In this document: positions 7,269 through 60,322 of the stretch, one piece after another | How the letters are laid out: every line of letters begins with the position of its first letter | How positions within the stretch are numbered: the stretch's first letter is position 1 | Position numbers and translations under genes: made by a program | DNA from: Ascidiella aspersa | Lineage: Eukaryota | Direction: 5' to 3' | NCBI GenBank assembly: GCA_963924565.1 | Contig: OZ004614.1 | Location: 18,228,001-18,292,000 of the forward strand | DNA length: 64,000 nt | The notes under the pieces: model-generated | Databases searched by the model: none | What the model was told of the DNA's origin: nothing | The model's input: only the letters and a program-made list of their open reading frames with translations

Positions 7269-7353
7269 GTTGTATTTTGTTTACATGCCACAGGGCATGT
7301 ACGATAGTGGACAAAAGATGGCAGAGAGAGAAAAGAATAGAGACTTCACTATG

Positions 7354-8244: not shown

Positions 8245-8312
8245 CATTGGTTGGGAATCGAACCCAGGACCTCTGACTGTTGTGGCGGTGTTTGCAACCG
8301 TTTCGCCATTTA
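8245..8312 (-). other. tRNA-like Pol III A/B-box unit in element 2 3'UTR
   Basis: Minus strand TGGCGAAACGG (A box) ... GGTTCGATTCC (B box). No convincing full cloverleaf. Confidence 0.55.
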
Positions 8313-8351
8313 TCTTATATATGGTTTACGTTGAGATTACAGTATGGGTTG

Positions 8352-8424
8352 TTGTTGGTTGAGCGGGGAATCGAACCCGGGATCTTCGGCTTTACGAGCC
8401 GGCGTTTTAACCGTTAGACTACCT
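8352..8424 (-). other. tRNA-like unit directly after the element 2 ORF2 stop codon
   Basis: Minus strand GGTAGTCTAACGGTTAAAACGCCGGCTCGTAAAGCCGAAGATCCCGGGTTCGATTCCCCG: A box, anticodon-like stem CGGC/GCCG with a 7-nt loop, and T-arm GTTCGA. Confidence 0.6.
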
Positions 8425-11926: not shown

Positions 11927-11971
11927 GATAAAAGTCGATAGAGGAAAAACGATAAGGTTAGAATAAACGGT

Positions 11972-38526: not shown

Positions 38527-41500
38527 ATGCCCGCATACCTAAAAGTCATAACGCTAAACGTCGCGGGCATACACAACCCCCGTCGACGTTTAGCCATTTT
38601 CGAACTCCTAAAGTCCACTCGAGCAGATATAATCCTGCTTCAAGAGACCCACTCCACCCCACAGGACGAGGCCACCTGGGCCCACGAGTGGACCCCCGGC
38701 CCCGCCCTTTTTAACTCCGCCCCCTCCGGAGGCTCTGCCTCTAAGGGAGTAGCCATCTTGTTTAACTCCCCCACCTTCACCCCAACAAACGTCTTCTCTG
38801 ACTTAACCGGCAGAACCTTATCATGTGACATCACCAACTTGGACCCAACTATCCACATAACTAACATATACGCCCCATCCGGCAATAGAACCGCAAACAC
38901 CAAATTCTTTGAAAATCTATACCCATACCTCACCTCCCCAAACCCGATAGTTTTTGCAGGAGACTTCAATTCTGTTTTACAACCCCACTTGGACATTTAC
39001 CCCCCAAAATCAGCCCGCCATATAAACAAATCTCTAGCCACACTCATCGCCACAATACAATTAATTGACCCCTATAGAACTGCAAACCCTGACACCCAAA
39101 TTTTTACAAGAAGACAAACGAACACACAATCACGCATAGATCGATTCTACATCTCGTCAGATATCATAGCCACCAACTATTCAGTTACCCCTTTTTCCCT
39201 CTCCGATCATGACCAGGTCCTAATAACCATTAATATACCCCATACGCCCCCCAACAGGCCACGGCCTTTGGAGAAATAACATCCAAACTCTGAAACACCA
39301 AGATTTCAAAACCAAACTTCAAGTTAAACTCCACTGGCTAACGACATTAAAACACGACTTTGACCCGCTCAGTTTCTGGACCCTAATAAAGGAAAGAGCT
39401 GCTACCCTCCATAAAATAGTACATAAAGAGAACAACATAACTAACTCCCGGGAAATAACCCAGAAACATTTGGACTTAGCCAAATTAAGGGAGGAAATGA
39501 ATCCCAATAACTACCAGCAAACCCTTGTTAAGTTCCAGAATCTCAAGCGTGAATTAAACAAACATTATATATCAAAAGCACGATACGATCTGTTAAAAGC
39601 AAAAGCAAACTTAATAGAAAACAAAAACCTCTCTACCAAAACCCTCTACAAACTAGTGCTACCTAAAAAACATTCCAGTCACATTAAAGAACTACTAGAC
39701 GAAAATTCATTACCGTATGACACCCCCGTTGAACTATGCAACATCGCGAAAAAATTCTACGGAGAACTTTATGCACCATCACCCCCCACATACCACCACC
39801 TAAACCACTTTACCGATAACCATATACCCATTCCAGACCAGTTAAACACGGCACTAACCCAACCCATTACCCTTATAGAAATCCGACAAGCAATTAAAGC
39901 CTTTCCATCTGGTAAGACCCCCGGGCCCGATGGGCTAACTATCGAGTTCTACAACGAGTGCTGGGATTTAATCGGACCCCACCTCCTCCCCGCCCTCAAC
40001 CATGCATACTTCTCCCCCTCTCTCCCTCCTACTTTCGTAGAAGGCGCAATAATACTAATCCCCAAAACCACAGATGCCAACACCCTCTCGAACTTCCGCC
40101 CCATCTCACTTTTAAATACAGACCTTAAAATTCTTAACAAAATTCTCAACACCCGCATCAAACCCCATCTAAAACATTTTATTTCCCCCAACCAGCATGC
40201 CCAAACCAACAAAAATACCTCCACCGCCTCCAACCTCCTCCGCGACCTATATCATTTCTCATCCCAGAGCGACACCCACTCCTTCTTCATATCGCTCGAC
40301 TTCAAAAAAGCCTTTGACTCCATAACCCATACCTGGCTCTCCCACTCCCTTATTTCCCGTAATTTCCCCCCGTGTTTTGTAAACTACCTGACCGCTACCC
40401 AAACCTCGGCTTCATCCCAAATTCTAATTAACGGTCACCCCTCCCAACCCGTGGCGATCAGGAGAGGAGTGAGACAAGGCGACCCGCTAAGTCTCACCCT
40501 CTTCCTGATCGCCCTCGACCCTCTCCTCCAAAGTATCCAAAACAACCCCTCCATTGCCCCCTCCCCTGCTCCCATCCGAAACCCCCCTAAATTTATAGCA
40601 TATGCAGACGACGTCACCCTCACCCTTGCGCACCACCAATCCCTGCCTGCCTTATTTGACACCTTATCTAAATTTCACGACACCTCTGGCCTCTCCCTCA
40701 ATCCCCTTAAAACCAAAGCCACTTACAACCGCTCCCTCCCCCCGCCCTTTCTAAATATCCCCACCATAAATTGGAACCCCCTAGCCATATTTCCCCTCAA
40801 CATACCAATTGGCGACCCCACCCAAATTACCCAAGCATGGAACACAGCATACACCGAATTTGTAAACAAGACCTCACTAATCAAACACCCCTTTCTCACT
40901 TTTGACACTAAATCTATTCTATCCAAAACCCTGCTTCTCCCTCACTTCTCCCAACTAGCCCACGTCTACTCCCCCCCGGACCGCATCAAAAACAAAATAA
41001 ACAAGAAAATGTGCCAATTCATCACCGGTCCCCGCAACCCCACCATCCCATTGGACAAGCTCGCGGCCAGCCGCCCACACGGAGGCTACTCCATTGCCAA
41101 CATTCCCCTCTATTCGGACCTTTTTCTTATAAGACAAGTAGGCGCATACTTGCGACACCGCTTAGCTGACACCCCATCCGACACACAAACCCAAATAATC
41201 GAACACCAGCTAGGTATTCCATTGGCCCGAAAATACGAGCTCCGTTTCAAAAATACACTCCCCCATACCATTTTCCCTTCCCCACACTATAAGCAAATCT
41301 GGAACATCATTTTAAAATATAACCCGACCCTAACCGAAATAATATCCCCCAAAATAAAACCCTTATATCTCCGACTTACAACCCCACATCAGTACCTCCA
41401 CCCCACCAACCAAAACCGAAATCCCCCCAACTGGCCACTCATACACCATCCCATGCTTCCCTCCTACCTTAAAACATTCAACTACAAACTGGCATCAAAT

Positions 41501-41956
41501 GCAATCCCTGTCAAATGCCACACAGTCCCAAATATTCCGTCACTCCAACCAAACTGCCTCCTTTGCCACACACGCTATGAGTCGGATGTCCATCTTTTTC
41601 ATGAATGCCCACAAATACAACCCCTCCTAAATCATGTCAGATACATACACACCGCCTTCACATCCCACCAAACAGATTTCTTCAATCACCACTCCCACAT
41701 CACATTCACCACACCCCTTCAAACCCCCTTCCCAAACAACAACCTAATAACCCTTCTCAACACTGTCTTACACCATACTATATGGAAAACCAGAATTAAA
41801 AAAGCCATATTAGAAACCCCTGACCCAAACCCCACTCCGCCGCAAAAACTGATAACATCCTTCAATCAATCAATACGTATGAAATATAGAATCGAACAAG
41901 CAAAAACTACTCCAACATATATTGATCTATTCGAAAAGTTAATCACTTTACTATAA
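38527..41956 (+). pseudogene. Family A ORF2 (APE-RT), copy A1, +1 frameshift
   Basis: An extra C in the run at 39238-39241 relative to copy A2 splits the ORF into 38527-39279 and ~39240-41956. It may be a homopolymer error. Confidence 0.85.
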
Positions 41957-42531
41957 ACCAAGCTAGATCACTCTCACCCCACACCCTCCACCCTAGTTCC
42001 CGCCCGACTCCCTTTCTGTCCATTATTGTTTTCATTTCTTAACTTCTAATCTACCAATACAGAGAAACCAACGATTTCAGAGAGGTAAAAGTAACCATCG
42101 CCGCCATTTTGTTTTTAGAGACGCCATTTTGTTTTTCCGACGGCCATTTTGTTTTGTGATTAAGGCCCTTTTTAACTGAAATTGACAATTTCAAAGTGTG
42201 TCCCTACCCTCTGCAACCACAAAAGCATATCCTCGAAAGAGGGGAGCGAGAAATAAACCCAGAAATATCTTTTTTCCTACTCGTTGTTGTTTTTCCTTTT
42301 CCTTTCGTGCCAACATGCATACTCCCCTTGTAGGAGGAGTAAAGGCCTCTTATTTGTTTTTATTTTAGTTTTGTCACTGCTTAACGGTTTACACATCCCC
42401 TGCAGTCATGACACCAGCGTGCTGCACCCAGTTTCCCCTGTTATTTTTCGCCATACTTTTCGCCGTCCGCTACCAAAATTACACACTGCTCGTTGTTCAC
42501 ATCCGAAACGAATATCAATAAATAACCAATA

Positions 42532-42609
42532 AGGGCAATGATGAGCCCAAACCAAAGGGGGGCCCTAGCAAATTGCTAGCCCCAAAAACCCTGAGGTCAC
42601 TGAGCCCTC
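42532..42609 (+). ncRNA. Box C/D kink-turn-like module at the family A 3' end (A1)
   Basis: AGGGC-A-ATGATGA ... CTGA-GCCCT directly before poly(A). Confidence 0.7.
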
Positions 42610-42615
42610 AAAAAA

Positions 42616-42681
<66 letters not shown>

Positions 42682-46265: not shown

Positions 46266-47797
46266 ATTTCGGTTTGCTTGTCAGCTGAACCAAAAAACGG
46301 CTCTTTTCAGAGCCACCCATAACTTTGAAAGAGACAAACCCGATCGCTTTGCAAAAGGCTGCATTTTGTGTGTTTTGCTAATCGTATTGTTGCTCTTTTC
46401 ATTCCCACATTAGTCAACGAGCGATTGATTTACTGTAAGTTCGAAATAGGTGGAATCGAGCCCAAACTGAGAAAAGTTGGGCCCGAAAGCTTTCAAGTGC
46501 TAAACTATTTTCTAACTAAAATTATATTTCAAAAAAAACAAAACAAAAAAACAATGACGTTCTGGCACTTGTTGAGAAATGTAGGTAGGGTAGGGTAGGA
46601 TGGAGAGGCTAGCAGAAACAACGGGTCGGACCGGCGAAGGAGGCAGGCGGTCGGTCGGTGGAAAACGAAAAGAAACAGTTGGTGTTGTGCGGCCCCGAGA
46701 CAGCCTTAGCTAGGCGGGCAGCACGTTACGTTAGTCAATTAGGAAAAAACAGAAAAGCTGATTTTGCAATTTGCCAACAGGCAGGCAGGCAAACACATTA
46801 TTGAGAATGAGTTTTGTTTCTTTTCGGTGGTTCAGTTTCGGCAGTCTCAGTTAAGGGCTTGTTGCCTGGCTCGAACAGCAGCAAAAACTGTTCTAAAGGC
46901 GGTCCCTTGGCTGACTGCCTGTGCTTAGGCGACAAATCGCAGGGCTTTAATTTTTCGTGTACACGGTCTCGGTGTGACCCAGCCTCGAAAGCAATATCAC
47001 CGGGTAGTCTTGGGAGGCCCAAATCGATCGCGCGTTGGCGTTTTGGCAACTGAACACCTCGAAAAGGGCAGTCGTTCAGCTAAAGCCGAACGTTTCGAGC
47101 GTTGCTGACGACGGTGTGTCCTACTCAGCGACTTGATAGTCGACGGGTGCGCGCTACAGGACCTCAGGCGCTGGTAGACAAAATTTGAAGCGCCACCTCG
47201 GTCGGGCAGCCAGGCAAGCGAGCCTCTTGCTAAAATCAAAAGCACACCAAAGTGCAAGCAGTCGGCAGCAAACCTTTTCGGCATTTCACCGATTTCGCTT
47301 TGGTACGCAAACCACGTACAAATGGCCAGCGTGTGCTGTGTCGTCATAAATCCTTTATTGTTTCTTCGTTGTCGAAGAGAAGTTGATTGAATTAGCAAGC
47401 AAATTGCCATTTAGAAGGGATTGTCTATCCCTGGGATTGTCTATCCCTGCGCTTAAGCTTTGCTTGACAACCAGACAACTGAACATATTTATACTGTCAG
47501 ACAGTCGCAAATTACATCTGCGACTTATTTTGCTGCTACCAAGTCGGGTAGTGAAAAGTTAGTTCTGCGTAAAGACGCAACTTGGATTACTCTCGCCATC
47601 TGCAACCAACTTGGAATTGGATTAGCGCGGCTGCGCCATCAACCCTGCAACCAGGTGTGAACTTTCTTATTTCCTGAGTAACATTGCTATATAAACTGCC
47701 CTACCGGCCAACTGACAAGCCGCCATTTTGTCAAACCTGGCACTTCGGGAAATTTTTTGAAATTCTGCGGGAAATTTAGATTCCGTACCTCGCCGAA

Positions 47798-49081
47798 ATG
47801 GCCCCTACCACGAGTTGTCCTTTAACGGAAGCTGAACTCAAAAGCCTGATTAATTTCGATCGTTCTACAGAGGTAGAAGCTCAGTTTACCCCAGCCCACT
47901 CTCGCCCCGCCATTTATGACCTTCTGGCTCACCTTCGCTTTAAGTTTACCAACCTAGAGGGGCTGACACAACTTCCTAATGGTCGAGTGCAATTCGTTTG
48001 CACGACCAAAGAAAAAGCTGTAGAGCTAGCTAACCTCCTAAGACCCCATGCACGCTATGCAGAAACATTTAATCCAGATACGATAAAAGTCCGTCTCAGC
48101 TACGTGCCAATAAGACTCTCTGACAAGGCCTTAGCCCGGATATTCTCCGCAAAATTCGCGACGTGCCTCCGATCAAGAGAGATGCGCGACTCCTATGGTT
48201 ATAAGAACGGCAAACGTGAACTAACAGTGGTCAATTCTGAAATTATGCAAAGCCCCCTTCCGAAAGAGGCATGGATAGGTCCATTCAAAATAGGAATCCA
48301 CTACGATGGTCAACCCCCATTTTGCAAATACTGCAAAGCACAGGACCACGAGGTGGAGCATTGCACAAAATTAAAAGAGAAAAAGAAGCAAATTAAAGAA
48401 AAAGAAATACTAGATAAAAAAATAGCATCAAACATCCATCCTAACCATAACCAATTCAATCAGGACCCAATATTTAGTGCCATATTAGAAAACATGGACA
48501 TCTTCCCCAACCTGGCAGGACCCACAACCTCTAATATTTTCCTTGCGGGAACTAGACCCGAAAACCATACCAAAACTACCAGTACCCCCCAACCCGGAAC
48601 CATCCCCCCACCTGCCCACACGATTGTCCAATCCCAACCAGCAGTGACCGACAAAGTTGAACCTCACCACGATGACAACATCAATCGCATCGTCCCGATT
48701 CACATGAATATCCCCTCAGACTTAGAGTCGGACGAACACGAAGATGAAGACGACCTTGAAGAAGCCGACAACCACAACGAGAATGGAAATAAATGCGAGT
48801 CGAAAGACTTGCAGGAATTTCGAAAAGAAAAGCAACCAGAAGACCGCCCACCACCTCCCCCCAAACCCACACCTTCTTACGCATACCCCGGACTCCCAAA
48901 ACCATCCATTGTTGACCCTGCAAAAAGAGATAGATCGGGTGACTCAACTCCCGACCGTAAACCCAAAAACCCCAAAACCCAAAACACCATCTATGAATGC
49001 CCCCAATGTTTTACGTCCTTTATTGATGACATACAAAATTGTGACTGCGTCATACCCACACTCCCAGATTCCACAATCTAA
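47798..49081 (+). CDS. Family A ORF1, copy A2
   Basis: 427 aa, nearly identical to A1 ORF1. Confidence 0.9.
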   Translation: MAPTTSCPLTEAELKSLINFDRSTEVEAQFTPAHSRPAIYDLLAHLRFKFTNLEGLTQLPNGRVQFVCTTKEKAVELANLLRPHARYAETFNPDTIKVRLSYVPIRLSDKALARIFSAKFATCLRSREMRDSYGYKNGKRELTVVNSEIMQSPLPKEAWIGPFKIGIHYDGQPPFCKYCKAQDHEVEHCTKLKEKKKQIKEKEILDKKIASNIHPNHNQFNQDPIFSAILENMDIFPNLAGPTTSNIFLAGTRPENHTKTTSTPQPGTIPPPAHTIVQSQPAVTDKVEPHHDDNINRIVPIHMNIPSDLESDEHEDEDDLEEADNHNENGNKCESKDLQEFRKEKQPEDRPPPPPKPTPSYAYPGLPKPSIVDPAKRDRSGDSTPDRKPKNPKTQNTIYECPQCFTSFIDDIQNCDCVIPTLPDSTI

Positions 49082-49209
49082 CCCCCTCCCCCCCCCGCCC
49101 ATCCTTGTCGTTGATATATCCTTATTTATTGTTTGTGTAACTTAAATTTAGTAACTGTAGCCTATAACTGTTGTTTTATTGTAATCATGCAACTACCGTA
49201 AAATGTAGA

Positions 49210-52200
49210 ATGCCCGCATACCTAAAAGTCATAACGCTAAACGTCGCGGGCATACACAACCCCCGTCGACGTTTAGCCATTTTCGAACTCCTAAAGTCCA
49301 CTCGAGCAGATATAATCCTGCTTCAAGAGACCCACTCCACCCCACAGGACGAGGCCACCTGGGCCCACGAGTGGACCCCCGGCCCCGCCCTTTTTAACTC
49401 CGCCCCCTCCGGAGGCTCTGCCTCTAAGGGAGTAGCCATCTTGTTTAACTCCCCCACCTTCACCCCAACAAACGTCTTCTCTGACTTAACCGGCAGAACC
49501 TTATCATGTGACATCACCAACTTGGACCCAACTATCCACATAACTAACATATACGCCCCATCCGGCAATAGAACCGCAAACACCAAATTCTTTGAAAATC
49601 TATACCCATACCTCACCTCCCCAAACCCGATAGTTTTTGCAGGAGACTTCAATTCTGTTTTACAACCCCACTTGGACATTTACCCCCCAAAATCAGCCCG
49701 CCATATAAACAAATCTCTAGCCACACTCATCGCCACAATACAATTAATTGACCCCTATAGAACTGCAAACCCTGACACCCAAATTTTTACAAGAAGACAA
49801 ACGAACACACAATCACGCATAGATCGATTCTACATCTCGTCAGATATCATAGCCACCAACTATTCAGTTACCCCTTTTTCCCTCTCCGATCATGACCAGG
49901 TCCTAATAACCATTAATATACCCATACGCCCCCCAACAGGCCACGGCCTTTGGAGAAATAACATCCAAACTCTGAAACACCAAGATTTCAAAACCAAACT
50001 TCAAGTTAAACTCCACTGGCTAACGACATTAAAACACGACTTTGACCCGCTCAGTTTCTGGACCCTAATAAAGGAAAGAGCTGCTACCCTCCATAAAATA
50101 GTACATAAAGAGAACAACATAACTAACTCCCGGGAAATAACCCAGAAACATTTGGACTTAGCCAAATTAAGGGAGGAAATGAATCCCAATAACTACCAGC
50201 AAACCCTTGTTAAGTTCCAGAATCTCAAGCGTGAATTAAACAAACATTATATATCAAAAGCACGATACGATCTGTTAAAAGCAAAAGCAAACTTAATAGA
50301 AAACAAAAACCTCTCTACCAAAACCCTCTACAAACTAGTGCTACCTAAAAAACATTCCAGTCACATTAAAGAACTACTAGACGAAAATTCATTACCGTAT
50401 GACACCCCCGTTGAACTATGCAACATCGCGAAAAAATTCTACGGAGAACTTTATGCACCATCACCCCCCACATACCACCACCTAAACCACTTTACCGATA
50501 ACCATATACCCATTCCAGACCAGTTAAACACGGCACTAACCCAACCCATTACCCTTATAGAAATCCGACAAGCAATTAAAGCCTTTCCATCTGGTAAGAC
50601 CCCCGGGCCCGATGGGCTAACTATCGAGTTCTACAACGAGTGCTGGGATTTAATCGGACCCCACCTCCTCCCCGCCCTCAACCATGCATACTTCTCCCCC
50701 TCTCTCCCTCCTACTTTCGTAGAAGGCGCAATAATACTAATCCCCAAAACCACAGATGCCAACACCCTCTCGAACTTCCGCCCCATCTCACTTTTAAATA
50801 CAGACCTTAAAATTCTTAACAAAATTCTCAACACCCGCATCAAACCCCATCTAAAACATTTTATTTCCCCCAACCAGCATGCCCAAACCAACAAAAATAC
50901 CTCCACCGCCTCCAACCTCCTCCGCGACCTATATCATTTCTCATCCCAGAGCGACACCCACTCCTTCTTCATATCGCTCGACTTCAAAAAAGCCTTTGAC
51001 TCCATAACCCATACCTGGCTCTCCCACTCCCTTATTTCCCGTAATTTCCCCCCGTGTTTTGTAAACTACCTGACCGCTACCCAAACCTCGGCTTCATCCC
51101 AAATTCTAATTAACGGTCACCCCTCCCAACCCGTGGCGATCAGGAGAGGAGTGAGACAAGGCGACCCGCTAAGTCTCACCCTCTTCCTGATCGCCCTCGA
51201 CCCTCTCCTCCAAAGTATCCAAAACAACCCCTCCATTGCCCCCTCCCCTGCTCCCATCCGAAACCCCCCTAAATTTATAGCATATGCAGACGACGTCACC
51301 CTCACCCTTGCGCACCACCAATCCCTGCCTGCCTTATTTGACACCTTATCTAAATTTCACGACACCTCTGGCCTCTCCCGCAATCCCCTTAAAACCAAAG
51401 CCACTTACAACCGCTCCCTCCCCCCGCCCTTTCTAAATATCCCCACCATAAATTGGAACCCCCTAGCCATATTTCCCCTCAACATACCAATTGGCGACCC
51501 CACCCAAATTACCCAAGCATGGAACACAGCATACACCGAATTTGTAAACAAGACCTCACTAATCAAACACCCCTTTCTCACTTTTGACACTAAATCTATT
51601 CTATCCAAAACCCTGCTTCTCCCTCACTTCTCCCAACTAGCCCACGTCTACTCCCCCCCGGACCGCATCAAAAACAAAATAAACAAGAAAATGTGCCAAT
51701 TCATCACCGGTCCCCGCAACCCCACCATCCCATTGGACAAGCTCGCGGCCAGCCGCCCACACGGAGGCTACTCCATTGCCAACATTCCCCTCTATTCGGA
51801 CCTTTTTCTTATAAGACAAGTAGGCGCATACTTGCGACACCGCTTAGCTGACACCCCATCCGACACACAAACCCAAATAATCGAACACCAGCTAGGTATT
51901 CCATTGGCCCGAAAATACGAGCTCCGTTTCAAAAATACACTCCCCCATACCATTTTCCCTTCCCCACACTATAAGCAAATCTGGAACATCATTTTAAAAT
52001 ATAACCCGACCCTAACCGAAATAATATCCCCCAAAATAAAACCCTTATATCTCCGACTTACAACCCCACATCAGTACCTCCACCCCACCAACCAAAACCG
52101 AAATCCCCCCAACTGGCCACTCATACACCATTCCATGCTTCCCTCCTACCTTAAAACATTCAACTACAAACTGGCATCAAATGCAATCCCTGTCAAATGC

Positions 52201-52638
52201 CACACAGTCCCAAATATTCCGTCACTCCAACCAAACTGCCTCCTTTGCCACACACGCTATGAGTCGGATGTCCATCTTTTTCATGAATGCCCACAAATAC
52301 AACCCCTCCTAAATCATGTCAGATACATACACACCGCCTTCACATCCCACCAAACAGATTTCTTCAATCACCACTCCCACATCACATTCACCACACCCCT
52401 TCAAACCCCCTTCCCAAACAACAACCTAATAACCCTTCTCAACACTGTCTTACACCATACTATATGGAAAACCAGAATTAAAAAAGCCATATTAGAAACC
52501 CCTGACCCAAACCCCACTCCGCCGCAAAAACTGATAACATCCTTCAATCAATCAATACGTATGAAATATAGAATCGAACAAGCAAAAACTACTCCAACAT
52601 ATATTGATCTATTCGAAAAGTTAATCACTTTACTATAA
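49210..52638 (+). CDS. Family A ORF2: APE endonuclease + RT + CCHC zinc finger (1142 aa from ATG 49210)
   Basis: TLNVAG, QETH, NIYAP, GDFN, RIDRF, SDH, PGPDG, FRPISLLN, LDFKKAFD, GVRQGDPLS, YADD, CLLC-x8-H-x4-C. Confidence 0.96.
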   Translation: MPAYLKVITLNVAGIHNPRRRLAIFELLKSTRADIILLQETHSTPQDEATWAHEWTPGPALFNSAPSGGSASKGVAILFNSPTFTPTNVFSDLTGRTLSCDITNLDPTIHITNIYAPSGNRTANTKFFENLYPYLTSPNPIVFAGDFNSVLQPHLDIYPPKSARHINKSLATLIATIQLIDPYRTANPDTQIFTRRQTNTQSRIDRFYISSDIIATNYSVTPFSLSDHDQVLITINIPIRPPTGHGLWRNNIQTLKHQDFKTKLQVKLHWLTTLKHDFDPLSFWTLIKERAATLHKIVHKENNITNSREITQKHLDLAKLREEMNPNNYQQTLVKFQNLKRELNKHYISKARYDLLKAKANLIENKNLSTKTLYKLVLPKKHSSHIKELLDENSLPYDTPVELCNIAKKFYGELYAPSPPTYHHLNHFTDNHIPIPDQLNTALTQPITLIEIRQAIKAFPSGKTPGPDGLTIEFYNECWDLIGPHLLPALNHAYFSPSLPPTFVEGAIILIPKTTDANTLSNFRPISLLNTDLKILNKILNTRIKPHLKHFISPNQHAQTNKNTSTASNLLRDLYHFSSQSDTHSFFISLDFKKAFDSITHTWLSHSLISRNFPPCFVNYLTATQTSASSQILINGHPSQPVAIRRGVRQGDPLSLTLFLIALDPLLQSIQNNPSIAPSPAPIRNPPKFIAYADDVTLTLAHHQSLPALFDTLSKFHDTSGLSRNPLKTKATYNRSLPPPFLNIPTINWNPLAIFPLNIPIGDPTQITQAWNTAYTEFVNKTSLIKHPFLTFDTKSILSKTLLLPHFSQLAHVYSPPDRIKNKINKKMCQFITGPRNPTIPLDKLAASRPHGGYSIANIPLYSDLFLIRQVGAYLRHRLADTPSDTQTQIIEHQLGIPLARKYELRFKNTLPHTIFPSPHYKQIWNIILKYNPTLTEIISPKIKPLYLRLTTPHQYLHPTNQNRNPPNWPLIHHSMLPSYLKTFNYKLASNAIPVKCHTVPNIPSLQPNCLLCHTRYESDVHLFHECPQIQPLLNHVRYIHTAFTSHQTDFFNHHSHITFTTPLQTPFPNNNLITLLNTVLHHTIWKTRIKKAILETPDPNPTPPQKLITSFNQSIRMKYRIEQAKTTPTYIDLFEKLITLL

Positions 52639-53213
52639 ACCAAGCTAGATCACTCTCACCCCACACCCTCCACCCTAGTTCCCGCCCGACTCCCTTTCTG
52701 TCCATTATTGTTTTCATTTCTTAACTTCTAATCTACCAATACAGAGAAACCAACGATTTCAGAGAGGTAAAAGTAACCATCGCCGCCATTTTGTTTTTAG
52801 AGACGCCATTTTGTTTTTCCGACGGCCATTTTGTTTTGTGATTAAGGCCCTTTTTAACTGAAATTGACAATTTCAAAGTGTGTCCCTACCCTCTGCAACC
52901 ACAAAAGCATATCCTCGAAAGAGGGGAGCAAGAAATAAACCCAGAAATATCTTTTTTCCTACTCGTTGTTGTTTTTCCTTTTCCTTTCGTGCCAACATGC
53001 ATACTCCCCTTGTAGGAGGAGTAAAGGCCTCTTATTTGTTTTTATTTTAGTTTTGTCACTGCTTAACGGTTTACACATCCCCTGCAGTCATGACACCAGC
53101 GTGCTGCACCCAGTTTCCCCTGTTATTTTTCGCCATACTTTTCGCCGTCCGCTACCAAAATTACACACTGCTCGTTGTTCACATCCGAAACGAATATCAA
53201 TAAATAACCAATA

Positions 53214-53291
53214 AGGGCAATGATGAGCCCAAACCAAAGGGGGGCCCTAGCAAATTGCTAGCCCCAAAAACCCTGAGGTCACTGAGCCCTC
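53214..53291 (+). ncRNA. Box C/D kink-turn-like module at the family A 3' end (A2)
   Basis: Identical to 42532-42609. Confidence 0.7.
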
Positions 53292-53300
53292 AAAAAAAAG

Positions 53301-53342
<42 letters not shown>

Positions 53343-53352
53343 AATCGTCAAA

Positions 53353-53955
53353 ATGTCAGGAGGCGCAGGAGATAGCAGCAAGCCGAAAGCCAAGAAGGCA
53401 TCGCCGACCCAGGCGACTCATCCCACCTACCAGGTGATGGTCACCGCCGCCATTACACAGCTTAAAGAAAGAAACGGCTCGTCCCGACAGAAGATTGTCA
53501 AGTACGTCAAGGACAACTACAAGGTCAGCGACAACTTCAACGTACCCTTAAAAACCTGCATCAGGCGCCTTATCAAAAGTGGGCAGCTCGTGCAGGTCAA
53601 GGGAACTGGTGCTTCGGGCTCTTTCAAGCTCGCCAAGACCGACAAGAAGCCGGTCAAAAAAGAGGCCAAAAAGAAGCCAGTTGCCGCCAAAAAGCCGGCA
53701 GCCAAGAAAGCCGTCGCGGCTAAAAAGCCAGCTTCCGCCTCGGCTAAGAAGACCACCGCCAAAAAGGCCGCCGCCGCCGCGAAAAAACCCGCCGCAAAGA
53801 AGTCGCCCAAAAAGCCGGCTGCCAAAAAAGCGCCGGCAAAGAAATCGACGACGGCCAAAAAGCCGTCGCCCAAAAAGGCGGTCAAGGCAAAGAAGCCAGC
53901 AGCAAAGAAGCAGGCCAAGAAGCCAGCTGCCAAAAAGGCTGCCACTAAAAAGTAA
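53353..53955 (+). CDS. H1: Histone H1 (200 aa), separated from its promoter by A2
   Basis: Intact CDS with stem-loop. Confidence 0.93.
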
Positions 53956-54558
53956 GCCCCCCCCAATGATGAGCCGCACGCCTCCCCAATACGGCCGTGG
54001 CAAACACAAAAAACGGCTCTTTTCAGAGCCACCTTTTACTCACAAAAGAGATATTTTGAAGCAAGCCGTCGACGCTTGCCTAGAGCATACCGTTAGATAT
54101 AGGACTTGCGCTTTTGAGATAATTATCGCTACAAACAACAAACGAAAGAAATTTGCCTCCACTTAAGACGCGGGTCAATTTCAAAGCGTGCTTTTACGCT
54201 TGCCACCGGTATCCAATAGCGCCCGAACGAATTTTCCTGTTAGGTCTTCTTGTGTCAAGTGTTCAAGCAAAGAAGTTTCTGTTCAAGCCCTCTACAGTGA
54301 CCGCTTGTAAAGCTGACTTGTTTTTCAACACTTCAACATTAGGACCGCTGGAACCTTTTTTGTGTATTTGCCAACAGCAAGTTGATTGACTCGAAGACTG
54401 AAGTCTGTATTTGACGTTGTGAAGCTTTTCTGCCGAATCAACAACCGCCGTGACTGAATCGCGGCAATCTGTTACTTGAGTATTTGTTTCTTTTCAACAA
54501 TAATTGGCGTTTTGTCAGCCATCCTAGGTCCAGCTACAACTGCTACTTTACTTCCATC

Positions 54559-56055
54559 ATGACCACCATTGAGCAAAACCAAGACATTAACGTCCAAGTT
54601 GATGAAATGGCCGACGTCAAAACTCAGTTTGCGCCGGCCCGCACTAGACCGGCCCTTTATGCTGTTTTGCAACAAATTCATTTCGACTTTAAAACAAAAC
54701 TGGAAGGTCTTATTCAACACCCAAATGGTAGAGTCACCTTCTCGTGTGACACCAGGGAATCTGCCCTGCAACTAGCCCAAAGTCTCAAAATTGCTGGAGT
54801 CTGCCAGTACGCTGAAGCGTATGATCCAGACAAAACAAAGGTTAGATTGTCATATACTCCCACCCGTATGCGGGACAGCACTATTCAAAGGATTTTTAAT
54901 TTGAAATTTGCTACATGCTACCGTGTTTATGCATGTCGTGACAGTTTTGGCTTTAGAAATGGTAAGCGCGAGCTTACAATAAAACAATCGGAATTACTGA
55001 AGAATCCAATTCCAAAAGAAATACAAATAGGGAAATTTAAGATAGCTGTGTTTTATGAAGGACAACCTGAGTCTTGTAACTATTGCAAAACGTTTGGACA
55101 TAATATCAAAGACTGTGAAATCCTGTTAAAGAAGAAAGAAATAGCCAATTTTCAAGCCAACCGCCCTGCCATGCAGCACTCTCGAGCCTCGACAGCAGCC
55201 TGGTCAAGACCACCGGCCTTCACACTGGGAAATTTTCCACTAGCAAGTGGGAACATGCCATCAACCAGTAGCGTTTTCCTTCCAGGGAAAATGCCATCTA
55301 GCTCTAGCACCCCAAAAATTGTTAAAACTGGGTCACGAAACATCATTACAGTGGATAAAGAAAATGATTTGCTCCAAGGCGACCTAAACATTGATCAGAA
55401 CAGCCTCATAATAGAACCACCTAACAACCAACCCACCCAACACGATCAGAGCTCAGTTAAAAATGACAATACAGAAAAGCAGAATGATCCAGAAGAATTA
55501 GAGGTTGTAGAAATGGAAAAGGATGAAGAAAAACATGAGGTGCATCATAAAGATAATGTAGAAAGCGAAGATAACGATCACAGCCATGAAGAGGTAGAAA
55601 AACAAGGTGAAAATATCAATAACGAAGACAATTGTGCAAACAACAATCACAGTGACAATATTAATCATGAGAATAACAGTGAGCACAGTGCAAACAATAT
55701 GCACAGTGACAATGACAATACCAACAATGGAGACAACAGTGACAACAGTGATCACAGTGACAGCATCCCACCAAGCAAAAGCAATAATTCAAAAAACTCA
55801 AGCACCAAGAAGGATCCCCCGCTAACACCGGAACAAAACCTAGAGGTATTACTAAAAAGACACCGTTCTAGTTCTTCCGAAGAAACCCCACTAAAGAAAA
55901 ACCCTAAGCAAGATGCCCCAATGTTAATATGCGGCACCTGCTACATTCCAGCAAACGGAGAAATTGCGGCCTGTGAGTGCACGCCAGCAATTCTTATCCC
56001 ACTACTTGAGATTTTGCAGCGACACCCTGGCATCCGTCTGGACAACACTTTTTAA
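54559..56055 (+). CDS. Family B ORF1 (CCHC knuckle)
   Basis: First ATG at 54559. Homologous to family A ORF1 (QFAPARTRPALY / QFTPAHSRPAIY; CNYCKTFGHNIKDC); C-terminal CGTC-x10-CEC. Confidence 0.88.
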   Translation: MTTIEQNQDINVQVDEMADVKTQFAPARTRPALYAVLQQIHFDFKTKLEGLIQHPNGRVTFSCDTRESALQLAQSLKIAGVCQYAEAYDPDKTKVRLSYTPTRMRDSTIQRIFNLKFATCYRVYACRDSFGFRNGKRELTIKQSELLKNPIPKEIQIGKFKIAVFYEGQPESCNYCKTFGHNIKDCEILLKKKEIANFQANRPAMQHSRASTAAWSRPPAFTLGNFPLASGNMPSTSSVFLPGKMPSSSSTPKIVKTGSRNIITVDKENDLLQGDLNIDQNSLIIEPPNNQPTQHDQSSVKNDNTEKQNDPEELEVVEMEKDEEKHEVHHKDNVESEDNDHSHEEVEKQGENINNEDNCANNNHSDNINHENNSEHSANNMHSDNDNTNNGDNSDNSDHSDSIPPSKSNNSKNSSTKKDPPLTPEQNLEVLLKRHRSSSSEETPLKKNPKQDAPMLICGTCYIPANGEIAACECTPAILIPLLEILQRHPGIRLDNTF

Positions 56056-56116
56056 TTCGTGAAAAATAGGTCTTTTTAAGCGTTATTTTGCACACTATTT
56101 CTGAAAATCCCAGTCA

Positions 56117-59100
56117 ATGACTACTTACCTCAGTGTTGTCACACTGAACGTCGCCGGTCTACGTGACCGGCACAAACGTTCAGTCGTTTTTAACCTGTTA
56201 AAAAATACAAAATTCGATATTTTCATGTTACAGGAGACCCACTCTACCCCCCAGACTGAGTCAGTCTGGGCGCAAGAATGGGCCTCCGGCCATGCAATTT
56301 TTAACTCTGCCCCCCATGGAGGAAGCTACTCCAGAGGCGTTGCAATTCTCTTTAATTTTTACCACCCTTCCCCAAAAAACATATTTTCGGATTTAACCGG
56401 CCAAACGATTTCTTGTGACCTCCCTACCCTTACACACACCCTTCACTTAGTCAACATCTACGCCCCGTCTGGAAAACAGAAAGTAATACAAAATAGAAAT
56501 TTCTTTAACAACCTGTACTCATACTTGTCCTCCCCGTACCCCATAATGCTAGGTGGCGACTTTAACTGTGTCCTACAGCCAGACTTGGATAAATTCCCCA
56601 CCAAACAACATACCACACGTAATCACACCCTTGTAAACCTAACTCAAACGTTTGACCTGAAAGACAGCTACAGAATAACCAACCCTTTCACCAAAACCTA
56701 TACCCGCAGATCCCACAATACACAATCCCGACTCGACAGATTTTACATCTCCCCAAAAATTAACCCCCAAAACCACATTTTCACTCCTGTACCCTTTTCC
56801 GACCATGACATGTTCACCATTTTACTTGATATCCCCCTCTCCCCTCCCAGAGGATATGGCCTCTGGAAGAACAACAATACCACGCTCACAAACTCCAAAT
56901 TTAAATCCACTCTGGCACAAAAATACAAAAAATGGGAAACATTAAAACCCGATTACGACCCTCTTAATTTCTGGATTTTGGTAAAAGGAAAAATTGCCCT
57001 ACTCCACAAAAGAATTTATAAGAGCATAAGCTGCAATAAAAACCAGGAACTAGCCCGCAAACATTCGGAACTTTCTAAATTAAGAGAACAAATGAATTCT
57101 CATAACTTCCCGCAATCCTTTGCCAATTTCCAGAAATTAAAAAAGGAACTCAACCAATATTACACGCAGAAATCAAGAGAAGACCTCCTAAAGGCAAAAG
57201 CCAACGACATCGAAACACGGAACTACTCGGACAAAACCTTATACAAACATGTTTTACAAAAAAGAAAGCAAACACACATAACAGAAATTCTAGACGAATA
57301 TCATCTCCCTCATACAACCCCAACCGAACTTTGTAACTTAACCCACCAATATTACCAAGATTTGTATAGCCCCAGCCCTTCCCCACAAATTACATCTGAC
57401 CCCTTTGACTTTAACCATTCGAGCATACCAGACAAACTAAATCACATCTTAACCCTCCCCATACAACAACACGAAGTAAAATCAATTTTAAAAACATTTC
57501 AAACCTGCAAAACCCCCGGGCCCGATGGACTCAGCATTGAGTTCTACACCCAATGCTGGGAACAGATCGGCCCTGATCTCACCAAAGCCCTAAATACGGC
57601 CTATTTTTCAAACCGTTTACCTCCCGAGTTCACAGCCGGTGCTCTGACCTTAATACCCAAAACTGACAACGCCAACAATCTAAACAACTACCGCCCCATA
57701 TCATTGTTAAACACCGACCTAAAAATACTGGATAAAATTCTCAATTCCCGCATAAAACCCCACCTACATCATTTTATCTCCCCCAACCAACACGCCCAAC
57801 CAGGAAAAACAACCGCATCGGCGGCAATTCTCCTGCGCGACCTGCACCAACACGCCACCCAACAACCTCCCCCGTCATACTTCATAGCATTAGACTTCAA
57901 GAAAGCATTCGACTCGATTAGCTACCCCTGGATCCTCCATACTCTAAACAAAAGAAATTTTCCCCACAGCTTTATAAACTACATAAATGCATGCCAGGAC
58001 TCAGCAAATTCCAAAGTTTTAGTCAATGGTCACCCCACGGAAAACTTCGCAATCGGAAGAGGGGTGAGGCAGGGAGACCCCCTTAGCCTCACGCTTTTCC
58101 TGATCGCCCTGGACCCTCTCTTAAAAAACATTTCTGAAAACCCACAGATAACCCCATCCCCTTCCCCCGCCCGAATTTCACCGAAATTTATTGCTTACGC
58201 TGACGATATAACTCTAACTATTTCAAAGACAAGCTCCCTCCCACCTCTTTTTGACACGTTAAAACTTTTCGAACTAATATCCGGTCTGTCCCTAAACCCT
58301 AACAAAACTAAAGCCACCTTTACCCAAAATCCCCCACCACCCATTGAATCCCTTCCAATGATAACCTGGAACCCCCTCGGCATCTCCCCTTTAAACATTC
58401 CTATTGGCAACCCAAATCAAATTAAAAACCTTTGGCAAGAAGCATACGAAAAATTCAAGCACAAAATAACCCAACTCGCCCGCCCCTCTCTGACCCTGGA
58501 TTTTAAAGCAGTAATAACCAAAACTCTCCTACTCCCAAACTTTTCTTACCTGGCCAACGTCTACCCAATCCCCAACACCCTTCGACAAAAAATAAATAAT
58601 CAGATAACACGTTTTATTGCAGGCCCCCGTGCACCCATGCTCCCTATTGAAACACTCGCGGCCGCGCGCTTAAATGGAGGTTACGCGGTTGCCAACATTC
58701 CCCTCTACACAGATCTATACTTAACCAGACAGATAGGAGAGTACATCACACACCGCTTGACAGATACCCCATCGAACATACAACTTCAAATAATCGAATA
58801 CAACATTGGCATACAACTCTCAAACATGTATAATTTGCGACTTAGGAACACCTTACCTCACACACCCTTCCCATCCCCACATTATAAAAGAATCCTGGAA
58901 AGATTACGAAAATACACCCCAACAGAAACAGAAATATCGTGTCCAAAAATCCGCCCTTTATACTTACGTCTCACCACCCCACACCGATACAGTCACCCAC
59001 GCCCTAATGACAACCCCCCAAACTGGAACTTAGTACATCACAAAATGCTCCCATCATACCTGCGCAGCTTTAACTTCAAACTAGCCCACAACATTCTCCC

Positions 59101-59542
59101 GGTAAAATCCACACATATACCCAATAACCCAGCCTTGGACCCAAACTGTTATCTTTGCCATTCTAGGTACGAGACCAATATTCATTTATTTCACGACTGC
59201 CAGCAGATCGAACCCCTTAAAACCCACGTGAAGCATTTATATACCCAGATAACAGGAGACGCAACAACCTTTTTCGACCAATCCCCTCATATTACCTTTG
59301 TCACCCCACCCCAAACCCCACTACCCAACAACGACTTAATCACCATCCTCAACACAGTTTTACACCACACAATTTGGAAAATACGAATCAAAAAAGCAAT
59401 AGATCAAACCCCGGCCCCATTCCCCACCCGAGCCTTAATCACCTTCTTCAACAGGTCAATAAAAATTCGCCATAAAATTGAAAACGCACGAGAAAACCCA
59501 CAACATATATTAATGTACCAAAAAATAGTAAAACTTATATAA
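56117..59542 (+). CDS. Family B ORF2: APE + RT + CCHC zinc finger (1141 aa)
   Basis: All catalytic motifs intact (QETH, GDFN, SDH, YADD); colinear with family A ORF2. Confidence 0.96.
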   Translation: MTTYLSVVTLNVAGLRDRHKRSVVFNLLKNTKFDIFMLQETHSTPQTESVWAQEWASGHAIFNSAPHGGSYSRGVAILFNFYHPSPKNIFSDLTGQTISCDLPTLTHTLHLVNIYAPSGKQKVIQNRNFFNNLYSYLSSPYPIMLGGDFNCVLQPDLDKFPTKQHTTRNHTLVNLTQTFDLKDSYRITNPFTKTYTRRSHNTQSRLDRFYISPKINPQNHIFTPVPFSDHDMFTILLDIPLSPPRGYGLWKNNNTTLTNSKFKSTLAQKYKKWETLKPDYDPLNFWILVKGKIALLHKRIYKSISCNKNQELARKHSELSKLREQMNSHNFPQSFANFQKLKKELNQYYTQKSREDLLKAKANDIETRNYSDKTLYKHVLQKRKQTHITEILDEYHLPHTTPTELCNLTHQYYQDLYSPSPSPQITSDPFDFNHSSIPDKLNHILTLPIQQHEVKSILKTFQTCKTPGPDGLSIEFYTQCWEQIGPDLTKALNTAYFSNRLPPEFTAGALTLIPKTDNANNLNNYRPISLLNTDLKILDKILNSRIKPHLHHFISPNQHAQPGKTTASAAILLRDLHQHATQQPPPSYFIALDFKKAFDSISYPWILHTLNKRNFPHSFINYINACQDSANSKVLVNGHPTENFAIGRGVRQGDPLSLTLFLIALDPLLKNISENPQITPSPSPARISPKFIAYADDITLTISKTSSLPPLFDTLKLFELISGLSLNPNKTKATFTQNPPPPIESLPMITWNPLGISPLNIPIGNPNQIKNLWQEAYEKFKHKITQLARPSLTLDFKAVITKTLLLPNFSYLANVYPIPNTLRQKINNQITRFIAGPRAPMLPIETLAAARLNGGYAVANIPLYTDLYLTRQIGEYITHRLTDTPSNIQLQIIEYNIGIQLSNMYNLRLRNTLPHTPFPSPHYKRILERLRKYTPTETEISCPKIRPLYLRLTTPHRYSHPRPNDNPPNWNLVHHKMLPSYLRSFNFKLAHNILPVKSTHIPNNPALDPNCYLCHSRYETNIHLFHDCQQIEPLKTHVKHLYTQITGDATTFFDQSPHITFVTPPQTPLPNNDLITILNTVLHHTIWKIRIKKAIDQTPAPFPTRALITFFNRSIKIRHKIENARENPQHILMYQKIVKLI

Positions 59543-59783
59543 TATAACCTACCACATTCCCTTTCCCACCCCTTTTCCTCCCACCAAGACCAGCCGTGGT
59601 TTCGGACCCATTTCGCAGCTAGGTGCCCCTGCTGCCCATACGTGTTTGACTGTATAAGTGCGCCCAAATTCTGTCATATTGTTTTATTTGTATTCGCCTG
59701 CGATACGCACCTGTGTTTTTTGTACGCCAACGTTCGTTTATTTTTCGTTTCGTTCGCAAAATACAATACAATAAAAGAATAAA

Positions 59784-59850
59784 AGGGCAATGATGCTCCC
59801 CTACCCCGGGAGGTGTCATATTGGCACCACAAAACCCCCGAGGGTCCTGA

Positions 59851-59856
<6 letters not shown>
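59784..59856 (+). ncRNA. Box C/D kink-turn-like module at the family B 3' end
   Basis: AGGGC-A-ATGATGC ... CTGA-GCCCT directly before poly(A). Confidence 0.65.
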
Positions 59857-59914
<58 letters not shown>

Positions 59915-59992
59915 GTGGTGACGTCAAATGCGAGAGTACACAGCGTATAAAAGGCGGTGCTAAGAGAGAGATTTCACAGTTCGAATTTTTAA

Positions 59993-60322
<330 letters not shown>

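What the first reader, a model, noticed from the sequence alone, without database searches (positions are those of the whole stretch)
54205..59960. Family B inserts between the CCAAT box and the TGACGTCA/TATA core of the H4 promoter
Seen: the insertion has a very short TSD (AACG, 54226-54229 and 59912-59915) ~100 bp upstream of the H4 ATG. The CCAAT box now precedes the element's 5' end, while H4 keeps its CRE-like site and TATA. The junction style differs from family A (short TSD versus target replacement). Inference: a second, independent hit on a histone 5' regulatory region by a sister family. This is the strongest in-window evidence for lineage-level histone targeting, and the site may leave H4 partly active.
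Basis: partly seen in the sequence, partly recalled or inferred. Interest (0 to 1): 0.78.

Follow-up and report, generated by a model that had tools for sequence, protein, structure and literature searches.

The report
Jumping gene lodged in H4 promoter
A young, full-length LINE retrotransposon sits exactly between the CCAAT box and the core promoter of one histone H4 gene in a probable sea-squirt genome, and a daughter copy elsewhere still carries a scrap of that H4 promoter, so this spot is the family's launching site but not its only landing site.

Summary
Family B (window 54230-59911, 5,682 bp; ORF1, APE-RT-zinc-finger ORF2, A53 tail) interrupts one H4 promoter. It lies 99 bp before the ATG and about 64 bp before the inferred cap site. 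No target base is lost and 2-4 bp (AACG) are duplicated.

B is not a strict site-specific integrator: 4 of 5 separate B insertion events in the assembly lie outside histone DNA, with unrelated target sequences and TSDs of 21 and 40 bp. However, one of those events carries 31 nt of H4 upstream flank joined to B at the same nucleotide. Its source therefore sat at this H4 site and was transcribed from upstream.

Differences between the window copy and that progeny are mostly synonymous (pN/pS 0.22), while dead copies differ evenly across codon positions. This favours repeated occupation of the site over one decaying resident.

Sister families start at histone cap sites; one fuses ORF1 to H4 codons 1-4. 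WGS depth implies about 200 histone units, of which at most 0.2% carry B.

The scan already noted the general "LINEs living in histone genes" pattern on adjacent DNA of this genome (s1-801557). Six literature searches found no description.

The parts
53353..53955 (+). Histone H1 gene (200 aa) upstream of the insertion, same strand as B
   Evidence: ORF list. Its real ATG was fixed by comparing units with and without family A.
54015..54030 (+). H1 3' stem-loop (GGCTCTTTTCAGAGCC), 200 bp before B. Read-through past it would run into B.
   Evidence: Read directly. That it is a histone 3' processing hairpin is established knowledge of the motif (recalled), not tested here.
54197..54229 (+). H4 upstream flank that is carried as a 31-nt 5' transduction by the satellite copies on C5 and C3
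   Evidence: BLAST match starts at 54197. Sequences shown. The 17-mer occurs at only 6 H4 promoters plus these 2 copies.
54213..54217 (+). CCAAT box, now 12 bp upstream of B's 5' end and 5.7 kb away from the H4 core promoter
   Evidence: Its function as a promoter box is inferred, not tested.
54226..54229 (+). Left copy of the target-site duplication (AACG; at least CG)
   Evidence: Empty-site alignment.
54230..54558 (+). B 5' UTR (329 bp), without homology to any histone leader
   Evidence: blastn-short against the histone unit gave only matches of 13 bp or less.
54559..56055 (+). B ORF1 (498 aa from the first ATG) with one CCHC knuckle. It is 41% identical to A ORF1 over 258 aa.
   Evidence: (zf-CCHC_2 at 16.2 bits, below the cutoff of 27).
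56117..59542 (+). B ORF2 (1,141 aa): apurinic-type endonuclease, reverse transcriptase, C-terminal zinc-binding domain. The frame is open.
   Evidence: Pfam PF03372 8e-17, PF00078 2e-35, PF13966 1e-7.
59543..59858 (+). B 3' UTR ending in the conserved tail module GGGCAATGATG...GAGCCCTC shared with sister families
   Evidence: Compared by eye with the A, L015, L017, L019 and L026 tails. No Rfam match.
59859..59911 (+). Uninterrupted poly(A) tail of 53 A
59912..59915 (+). Right copy of the target-site duplication (AACG)
59919..59926 (+). CRE-like TGACGTCA retained by the H4 gene
   Evidence: It is present at the same place in 4 of 4 intact units.
59929..59929 (+). C>T variant private to this unit. 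It is upstream of the TATA box and so is not in the mRNA.
59945..59954 (+). H4 TATA box. The inferred cap site is about 59976.
   Evidence: The cap site is inferred from 4 dispersed sister elements that all begin at unit position 1016-1022.
60011..60322 (+). H4 gene with an intact frame, identical protein to the other 5 full copies

Best explanation
Window 54230-59911 is a recent target-primed reverse-transcription insertion of a full-length L1-superfamily LINE (family B). It lies in the promoter of one H4 gene of the tandem histone array, between the CCAAT box and the CRE/TATA core.

This position is the family's home or source site. Copies there are transcribed from upstream of the element, through the H1-H4 spacer, most simply as read-through from H1. 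Their RNA therefore carries H4 upstream flank. Progeny land either back at this site or, often, anywhere else. At other sites they arrive truncated or later break, and they persist as fossils.

Integration preference for the H4 site is real but soft. It is not a strict endonuclease-encoded sequence specificity. The interrupted H4 gene keeps its core promoter but is 1 of about 200 copies, so the host cost is negligible.

Shown: the anatomy, the exact junctions, dispersal of other copies, the 5' transduction and the selection signature.
Inferred: read-through transcription, repeated re-occupation of the site, and the reason for the preference.
For: (1) Exact insertion signature: in-register flanks, 2-4 bp TSD, A53 tail, both ORFs open.

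(2) The satellite copies (C5, about 16-22 kb; C3, about 22-27.5 kb) are 100% identical over 4,870 bp and 99.5% over 9,517 bp, so they count as one event. A partial copy at C3:39.28 Mb shares the same 3' junction. Inside a 21-bp TSD, these copies carry 31 nt of H4 upstream flank joined to B at the same nucleotide as in the window. The source therefore sat at this H4 site, and its transcript began at least 31 nt upstream of B.

(3) Window copy versus that progeny: 43 synonymous and 34 nonsynonymous differences, pN/pS 0.22, binomial P 1e-10 against neutrality. By codon position the differences are 20/15/42 (P 0.0003). Three comparisons among dead copies are flat, 22/26/29 (P 0.62). Two lineages that diverged under selection therefore share one junction.

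(4) The window copy is the only B copy in the assembly with both frames open. The others have an 851-bp deletion, a 5' truncation or stop codons.

(5) 1 of 5 B events lies in an array that makes up about 0.3% of the genome. The chance of at least 1 in 5 is 0.015 (post hoc).

(6) Sister families behave alike. A is at the H1 leader in 3 of 3 copies. Relics are joined to the H1 leader and to H3 coding sequence. Four dispersed elements begin at the H4 cap site with ORF1 fused to H4 codons 1-4. One element begins with the H2B leader.

(7) Three RNA reads cover the spacer at 54210 in the sense orientation.
Against: - Only one B copy sits at the H4 site in the assembly (1 of 6 H4 promoters).
- In WGS run X13, 169 reads show the empty junction. 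B's 5' bin has depth of about 2.7 against about 1,170 on the flank, so occupancy is at most 0.2%.
- 4 of 5 B events are off-site, with unrelated target sequences and TSDs of 21 and 40 bp.
- The 3' junction of the source copy is unknown. Only the 5' junction is shown to recur.
- The 5' end of the transduced piece lies at a GCTTGC microhomology, so no transcription start is defined.
- The codon-position excess against the empirical control is only borderline: Fisher P 0.052, or 0.013 when the L009 comparison is added. These comparisons share branches.
- The 21-bp 'TSD' lies in a tandem satellite and could instead be a deletion of nearly one monomer.
- B is almost silent in the one RNA run laid, at 1x or less and in both orientations.
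- The enrichment P value is post hoc.
Confidence: 0.55

Rival explanations
1. Strict sequence-specific targeting. B's endonuclease recognises the H4 promoter sequence, as R1 and Tx1-type elements recognise their targets, and the whole lineage is built for histone targeting.
For: The junction is exact and the TSD very short. The same 5' junction is preserved in a diverged progeny copy. Sister family A is at one H1 site in 3 of 3 copies.
Against: 4 of 5 B events lie at non-histone sites, and the targets share nothing visible with ...CCCG/AACG. Short B-tailed elements also lie in non-histone DNA, 3 of 3 looked at. 5 of 6 assembled H4 promoters are empty, as are more than 99% of those in WGS reads. 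The three A copies may be one event multiplied by unit duplication (99.8% identical).
Confidence: 0.08
2. Chance insertion with no preference. B integrates like an ordinary L1. One copy happened to land in the histone array, where a multicopy gene tolerates it. The transduced progeny came from this same physical insertion, and the histone association of relatives reflects tolerance and assembly bias towards units marked by insertions.
For: B copies are dispersed and TSD lengths vary. Occupancy is very low. The assembled units flank a 200-N gap and are therefore a biased sample. The flank variant and the 1-nt junction difference could be later mutations.
Against: Differences between the window copy and the progeny are mostly synonymous, whereas in-place decay should be even across codon positions. 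The uninterrupted A53 tail and two open frames are hard to reconcile with an insertion older than the satellite event, whose duplicates have since diverged by 1.8%. At least 5 distinct families or relics sit in, or start with, histone 5' regions, all in the sense orientation.
Confidence: 0.22
3. Guided homing without sequence-specific cleavage. One version is tethering of the element's ribonucleoprotein to histone-locus chromatin or transcription factors, which is position-specific as with Pol III-gene-targeting elements. The other is pairing of the co-transcribed H4 flank in the cDNA with the target, or cDNA-mediated conversion of a resident copy.
For: Different families occupy different nucleotides, but always 5' regions of histone genes and always in the sense orientation. 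B RNA does carry target flank. The precise 5' junction with no target loss fits homology-assisted joining.
Against: No protein domain suggests a tether; Pfam finds only APE, RT and zinc domains. Off-site events are frequent. Nothing here tests an interaction. Homology at the 5' end does not explain where the first nick falls.
Confidence: 0.15

Closest known systems
Target-specific APE-type LINEs of the Tx1 and R1 groups (for example Tx1L, Keno in U2 snRNA genes, Mutsu in 5S rDNA)
   Same: They share APE + RT + C-terminal zinc domain with a separate ORF1, residence in tandem multicopy genes, and several related families that each have their own site. The Utopia paper's introduction names the Tx1 and R1 clades as the APE-type target-specific groups (PMC4640811, passage seen). 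The family names are recalled.
   Different: The host here is a Pol II protein-coding gene family. B's site is in a promoter, not inside the gene. Most B copies are off-target. Clade membership was not tested by phylogeny.
R2/R1 in rDNA
   Same: The elements live in a minority of units of a large tandem array, depend on host-unit transcription, and are subject to array turnover. R2 is transcribed only as part of the pre-rRNA (abstracts of PMC8789037 and PMC12192640, seen in the search listings). Homology-assisted 5' joining of R2Bm is recalled (Fujimoto et al. 2004, not seen).
   Different: R2 uses a restriction-like endonuclease and is strictly site-specific. B sits upstream of the host gene's start, so it cannot ride the H4 transcript itself.
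SLACS/CZAR/CRE elements in spliced-leader RNA genes of trypanosomatids (recalled, no paper seen)
   Same: The elements are inserted a few nucleotides after the host gene's start, so the host promoter drives them and their RNA begins with host leader. This matches the sister families here that start at the H4, H1 and H2B cap sites.
   Different: B itself does not start with a histone leader. Those elements have a different endonuclease type and a small-RNA gene host.
5' transduction by human L1 (recalled, no paper seen)
   Same: A progeny copy carries source-locus flank at its 5' end, inside the TSD, because transcription began upstream of the element. This is exactly the anatomy of the C5/C3 copies.
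   Different: Here the transduced piece identifies a histone promoter as the source, and the same junction is found occupied in the genome.

Membership tests
L1-superfamily (APE-type) LINE | N-terminal apurinic/apyrimidinic-type endonuclease followed by a reverse transcriptase in ORF2 | tested here: met
   PF03372 at residues 8-230 (8e-17) and PF00078 at residues 513-735 (2e-35).
L1-superfamily (APE-type) LINE | C-terminal cysteine-rich zinc-binding domain in ORF2 | tested here: met
   PF13966 zf-RVT at residues 965-1029, 32.7 bits against a cutoff of 27.5.
L1-superfamily (APE-type) LINE | Poly(A) tail and target-site duplication from target-primed reverse transcription | tested here: met
   A53 tail with a 2-4 bp TSD in the window. 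A 40-bp TSD (39 of 40 identical) at L009. A 21-bp TSD at the satellite copy.
L1-superfamily (APE-type) LINE | ORF1 nucleic-acid-binding protein with a CCHC knuckle | tested here: inconclusive
   One CX2CX4HX4C string is visible in ORF1, but zf-CCHC_2 scores 16.2 bits, below the cutoff of 27.
Tx1 clade | Phylogenetic placement of the RT among named Tx1 references | not tested
   No named clade references were on hand. The best homologue is a Phallusia mammillata 'pol-like protein' (45%), and a Ciona 'pol-like protein' scores 26%.
Target-sequence-specific LINE | Nearly all independent copies lie at one target sequence | tested here: not met
   Only 1 of 5 B events of at least 84% identity is at the H4 site. 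The others are in satellite, unique DNA, C9 and C7.
Target-sequence-specific LINE | The same junction is formed by independent insertions | tested here: inconclusive
   The same 5' junction is seen in the window copy and in the source of the satellite copy, and the two lineages are separated by selected divergence. The 3' junction of the source is unknown.
5' transduction | Source-locus flank lies at the 5' end of a progeny copy, inside its TSD, contiguous with the element | tested here: met
   A 31-nt H4 flank lies between the 21-bp TSD and the B 5' end.
Host-promoter-riding LINE (SLACS/CRE-like way of life) | The element RNA begins at the host gene's transcription start | tested here: not met
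   B lies 64 bp upstream of the inferred H4 cap site, and its 5' UTR has no histone-leader homology. The feature is met by the sister family at L032-L035.

The most novel reading that the evidence does not exclude
B and its relatives form a guild of LINEs specialised on a Pol II protein-coding multigene family. Active copies persist only in histone 5' regions and return there by a guided route rather than by endonuclease sequence recognition. The route could be pairing of co-transcribed histone flank with the target, or tethering to histone-locus transcription machinery. B is the member that has moved from the leader into the promoter, so that the H4 upstream activating region (CCAAT) now abuts the element instead of the gene.
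Probability: 0.3. Interest if true: 0.8.

Novelty: new variant of a known kind. Interest (0 to 1): 0.62.

Why it matters
LINEs known to live in tandem multicopy genes use rDNA, small-RNA genes, telomeres or microsatellites. Six full-text searches found no description of a lineage tied to histone genes.

Histone genes are Pol II genes transcribed in S phase, with unusual 3' processing. An element depending on them would link retrotransposition to DNA replication.

The B copy adds two things to the picture already noted on neighbouring DNA. It gives direct proof, through a 5' transduction, that a copy in a histone promoter is a productive source. It also shows that landing specificity is loose while persistence of active copies is tight. 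That separates 'where elements insert' from 'where they survive', a distinction that copy counts alone usually cannot make.

Tried and rejected
- B 5' UTR as a captured histone leader: rejected. Matches to the unit are 13 bp or shorter.
- Rfam match for B's 3' tail: none at E of 1 or less. The snoRNA-like reading in earlier notes was not tested here.
- Allele-specific H4 expression through the 59929 variant: rejected as a design. The variant is upstream of the TATA box, and the transcript region has no private difference.
- Presence of the window's own junction in other individuals: could not be read. Reads are cut at the A run (59848-59923), and B reads in X13 mostly carry the satellite-copy variants.
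- Older B-like insertions at H4-promoter relics: none. The 17-mer with up to 1 mismatch occurs only at 6 promoters plus 2 transduced copies. No relic of that part of the unit appeared.
- Shared target motif among B insertion sites: none seen by eye.
- Literature: searches returned no paper on LINEs in histone genes. I saw passages only of PMC10946416, PMC5340908 and PMC4640811; everything else was search listings. Supplementary files were not opened, and subscription journals and Repbase entries are not covered, so 'not in print' is not established.
- A scan of metagenome contigs for relatives was not run. One search showed nothing closer than 45% identity in the protein collection.


Full report
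**Setting.** The window is C8:18228001-18292000 of a 308.6-Mb animal genome in 75 contigs. Earlier notes of the scan call it a probable ascidian. The best ORF2 homologue is a Phallusia mammillata 'pol-like protein' at 45% identity.

From about 17.2 kb to the end, the window is a tandem histone array with a 4,713-bp unit. Counting from window 17904, the unit holds H1 at 82-687 (+), H4 at 1057-1368 (+), H3 at 1739-2149 (+), H2A at 2645-3022 (-) and H2B at 3298-3657 (+).

All 6 full and 1 partial H4 genes found in the assembly lie in C8:18246960-18299476. A run of 200 N (28257-28456) interrupts the array.

**The observation.** I aligned four intact H1-H4 spacers with the two flanks. The element is inserted after ...CCAATAGCGCCCGAACG and before TGGTGACGTCA. 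No base is lost. AACG is present on both sides, but its two A's merge with the tail.

The element spans 54230-59911 (5,682 bp):
- 329-bp 5' UTR
- ORF1, 54559-56055
- ORF2, 56117-59542, with APE, RT and zf-RVT domains
- 316-bp 3' UTR
- 53 uninterrupted A's

The CCAAT box (54213) is left 12 bp upstream of the element. TGACGTCA (59919), the TATA box (59945) and the intact H4 frame stay downstream.

**Other B copies.** Searches of the whole genome used B's 5' third, its 3' kilobase and ORF2. I then compared the returned loci with the window. This gives five separate events of at least 84% identity.

(i) The window copy.

(ii) An insertion in a roughly 130-bp satellite near contig ends. It is present as two duplicates, C5 (about 16-22 kb) and C3 (about 22-27.5 kb), which are 100% identical over 4,870 bp and 99.5% over 9,517 bp. 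A partial copy at C3:39.28 Mb has the same 3' junction. All carry, or derive from, a form with an 851-bp deletion in ORF2.

(iii) C5:84.3-86.5 kb, 5'-truncated at window position 57653. It is flanked by a 40-bp TSD (39 of 40 identical) in unique DNA.

(iv) C9:10.933-10.938 Mb, 93-95% identical, truncated at both ends, with 4 stop codons.

(v) A 575-bp fragment on C7 at 84%.

None of (ii)-(v) has histone sequence beside it, except as described next. Three short elements with a B-like tail also lie in non-histone DNA.

**The transduction.** In event (ii) the 5' flank reads: satellite, then 31 nt identical to window 54197-54229 apart from a missing AT, then B (one A shorter at the junction). The 3' flank repeats 21 bp of satellite after a short, interrupted A tail.

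The 17-mer next to the junction occurs in the genome only at the 6 H4 promoters and in these two copies. This is a 5' transduction. The source element sat at the same nucleotide of an H4 promoter, and its template RNA began at least 31 nt upstream of the element.

The join between satellite and H4 piece lies in a GCTTGC microhomology, so the RNA may have been longer. H1 lies upstream on the same strand, and its 3' hairpin ends 200 bp before B. Read-through from H1 is the simplest source, but this is inference.

In the one RNA run laid, three reads cover 54210 in the same orientation as H4 mRNA. B itself is covered at 1x or less.

**Same insertion or repeated hits?** Between the window copy and the satellite copy there are 43 synonymous and 34 nonsynonymous differences (pN/pS 0.22; binomial P 1e-10 for that many synonymous changes under neutrality). 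By codon position the differences are 20/15/42 (P 0.0003). The window versus copy (iii) gives 7/9/24.

Comparisons among the dead copies are flat, 22/26/29 summed over three pairs (P 0.62). These include the two old duplicates of event (ii), which differ by 1.8%.

So the satellite event is not very young. Yet the window copy has accumulated little unselected change since its lineage separated from that event's source. Its tail is pristine and both frames are open.

The simplest reading is that selected, replicating B lineages have occupied this H4 position more than once, or that a resident copy was renewed through cDNA. The weaknesses are these:
- The Fisher test against the empirical control is borderline (P 0.052, or 0.013 with copy (iii) added).
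- The comparisons share branches.
- Only the 5' junction of the earlier occupant is known.

**How many targets?** In WGS run X13, about 1,936 Mb were read, or 6.3x of the assembly. Depth on the H4 side of the insertion is about 1,296, which implies roughly 200 units. The assembly holds about nine units, so the N gap probably hides most of the array.

At 54229, 169 reads continue with the empty-site sequence. B's first full bin has depth of about 2.7. At most 0.2% of H4 promoters carry B in that individual.

That individual differs from the assembly. 638 of 639 first-mate-plus reads have A at 60004 where all assembled units have T. Also, 1,031 of 1,170 reads lack the AT at 54210, which is the variant seen in the transduced piece.

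Counts from the assembly (1 of 6 promoters occupied) are biased, because units marked by insertions are the ones that assemble. With the array at about 0.3% of the genome, at least 1 hit in 5 random events has P 0.015. This figure is post hoc.

**The lineage.**
- Family A (57% ORF2 identity to B) is present three times at one place in the H1 leader, about 15 bp before the ATG. There is no dispersed copy at high identity. The three copies are 99.8% identical and may be one event multiplied with the unit.
- Downstream of the array, C8:18.32-18.50 Mb holds decayed histone pieces mixed with A/B-like elements.
- A B-tailed element is joined to the H1 leader within about 5 bp of A's site (L026, with a duplicate at C8:18493964).
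- An A-like element is joined to H3 coding sequence (L015).
- Four loci on C1, C3 and C4 have unrelated upstream flanks but begin at unit position 1016-1022, about 30 bp after the H4 TATA box. They continue through the H4 ATG and four codons directly into an ORF1 that is 28-35% identical to the A and B ORF1s. Their template RNAs started at the H4 cap site.
- An element on C6 begins with the H2B leader.

The lineage is thus tied to histone 5' regions mainly through where its productive copies are transcribed. Many progeny land elsewhere. B is the odd member, because it sits upstream of the cap site and has no histone leader of its own.

**Effect on H4.** The gene keeps its CRE-like site, TATA box, leader and frame. 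Whether it is expressed cannot be read from RNA. Its only private variant (59929) is not transcribed, and the transcript region is identical to other units. With about 200 units, the cost to the host is presumably nil (inference).

**Comparison with what is known.** The anatomy is that of an L1-superfamily LINE (see the membership table). Tx1 membership was not tested.

The way of life resembles four known cases:
- R1/R2 in rDNA, and SLACS/CRE in spliced-leader genes (recalled).
- Human L1, which provides the known 5' transduction mechanism (recalled).
- Pol III-gene-targeting elements, as a model for position-specific rather than sequence-specific insertion (recalled).

Six searches of the held literature found no LINE described in histone genes. 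Supplements, subscription journals and Repbase were not covered.

Earlier notes of this scan on adjacent DNA of the same genome describe the same general pattern (s1-801557, s1-791012, s1-801715). I used them as leads and re-derived what I state from my own calls.

**Verdict.** The element is an ordinary LINE in structure. Its strict 'targeting' is not supported. Its role as a histone-promoter-resident source copy is shown, and repeated occupation of the site is suggested. It is a new variant of a known kind.

Noticed in passing
L032 (C1:18340230), L033 (C4:13328350), L034 (C3:13125547), L035 (C3:34912059): A more distant family (ORF1 28-35% identical to the A and B ORF1s) begins at the H4 cap site. 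It uses the H4 ATG and first four codons fused in frame to its ORF1. The four loci have unrelated upstream flanks. None of the 6 assembled H4 genes carries such an insertion.
   Followed up: partly
L037 (C6:18018719-18018760) and rows for unit positions 3255-3338: An A/B-like element on C6 starts with the H2B 5' leader. Several other dispersed pieces start at unit position 3255-3260. A recurrent junction at unit position 3284-3287 in the H2B leader appears at several C8 places.
   Followed up: partly
L015 (C8:18469258) and L026 (C8:18336221; duplicate at C8:18493964): In L015, an A-like element's tail is joined to H3 coding sequence at about codon 25. In L026, a B-tailed element is joined to the H1 leader within about 5 bp of family A's site. 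Both lie in a 'graveyard' of decayed histone pieces 30-260 kb downstream of the array.
   Followed up: partly
window 28257-28456: A 200-N gap lies inside a histone unit. WGS depth (run X13) implies about 200 units against about 9 assembled, so most of the array is probably hidden here.
   Followed up: partly
window 54210-54211 and 60004: Array-wide variants differ between individuals. The AT at 54210 is absent in 1,031 of 1,170 X13 reads and in X2 contigs, but present in X1. At 60004, T is replaced by A in nearly all X13 reads and in the dispersed H4-leader elements. This is concerted evolution of the array.
   Followed up: no
Read-laying run X2, contig over window 54199-54867: A contig joins the H4 piece plus the B 5' end to 190 letters that differ from the assembly's satellite flank. 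This could be a second locus with the same 5' end or a diverged satellite. It is unresolved.
   Followed up: no
window 36639-42676, 47322-53337, 63669 onwards: Three family A copies sit at the same H1-leader position. One has a broken ORF2 (828-aa frame against 1,155). The leader copy next to A's 5' end has 3 substitutions relative to intact units.
   Followed up: partly
window 3173-13261 (-) and 1-2078: Outside the array there is another LINE with ORF2 only 24% identical to B and an ORF1 with two CCHC knuckles. Next to it is an 184-bp tandem repeat of 11 copies.
   Followed up: no
L020 (C5:2617327), L021 (C8:20927758), L023 (C3:29120937); many C2:35.8-36.6 Mb hits: The roughly 90-120-nt tail module shared by A and B ends many short elements in non-histone DNA, possibly non-autonomous passengers. 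There was no Rfam match for B's tail.
   Followed up: no
L002/L003/L012 (C5 and C3 contig ends): A roughly 130-bp satellite is shared by the starts of C5 and C3 and by a site 170 kb from the end of C3. Blocks of 100% identity of at least 4.9 kb link C5 and C3, which indicates recent exchange between chromosome ends or an assembly duplication.
   Followed up: no
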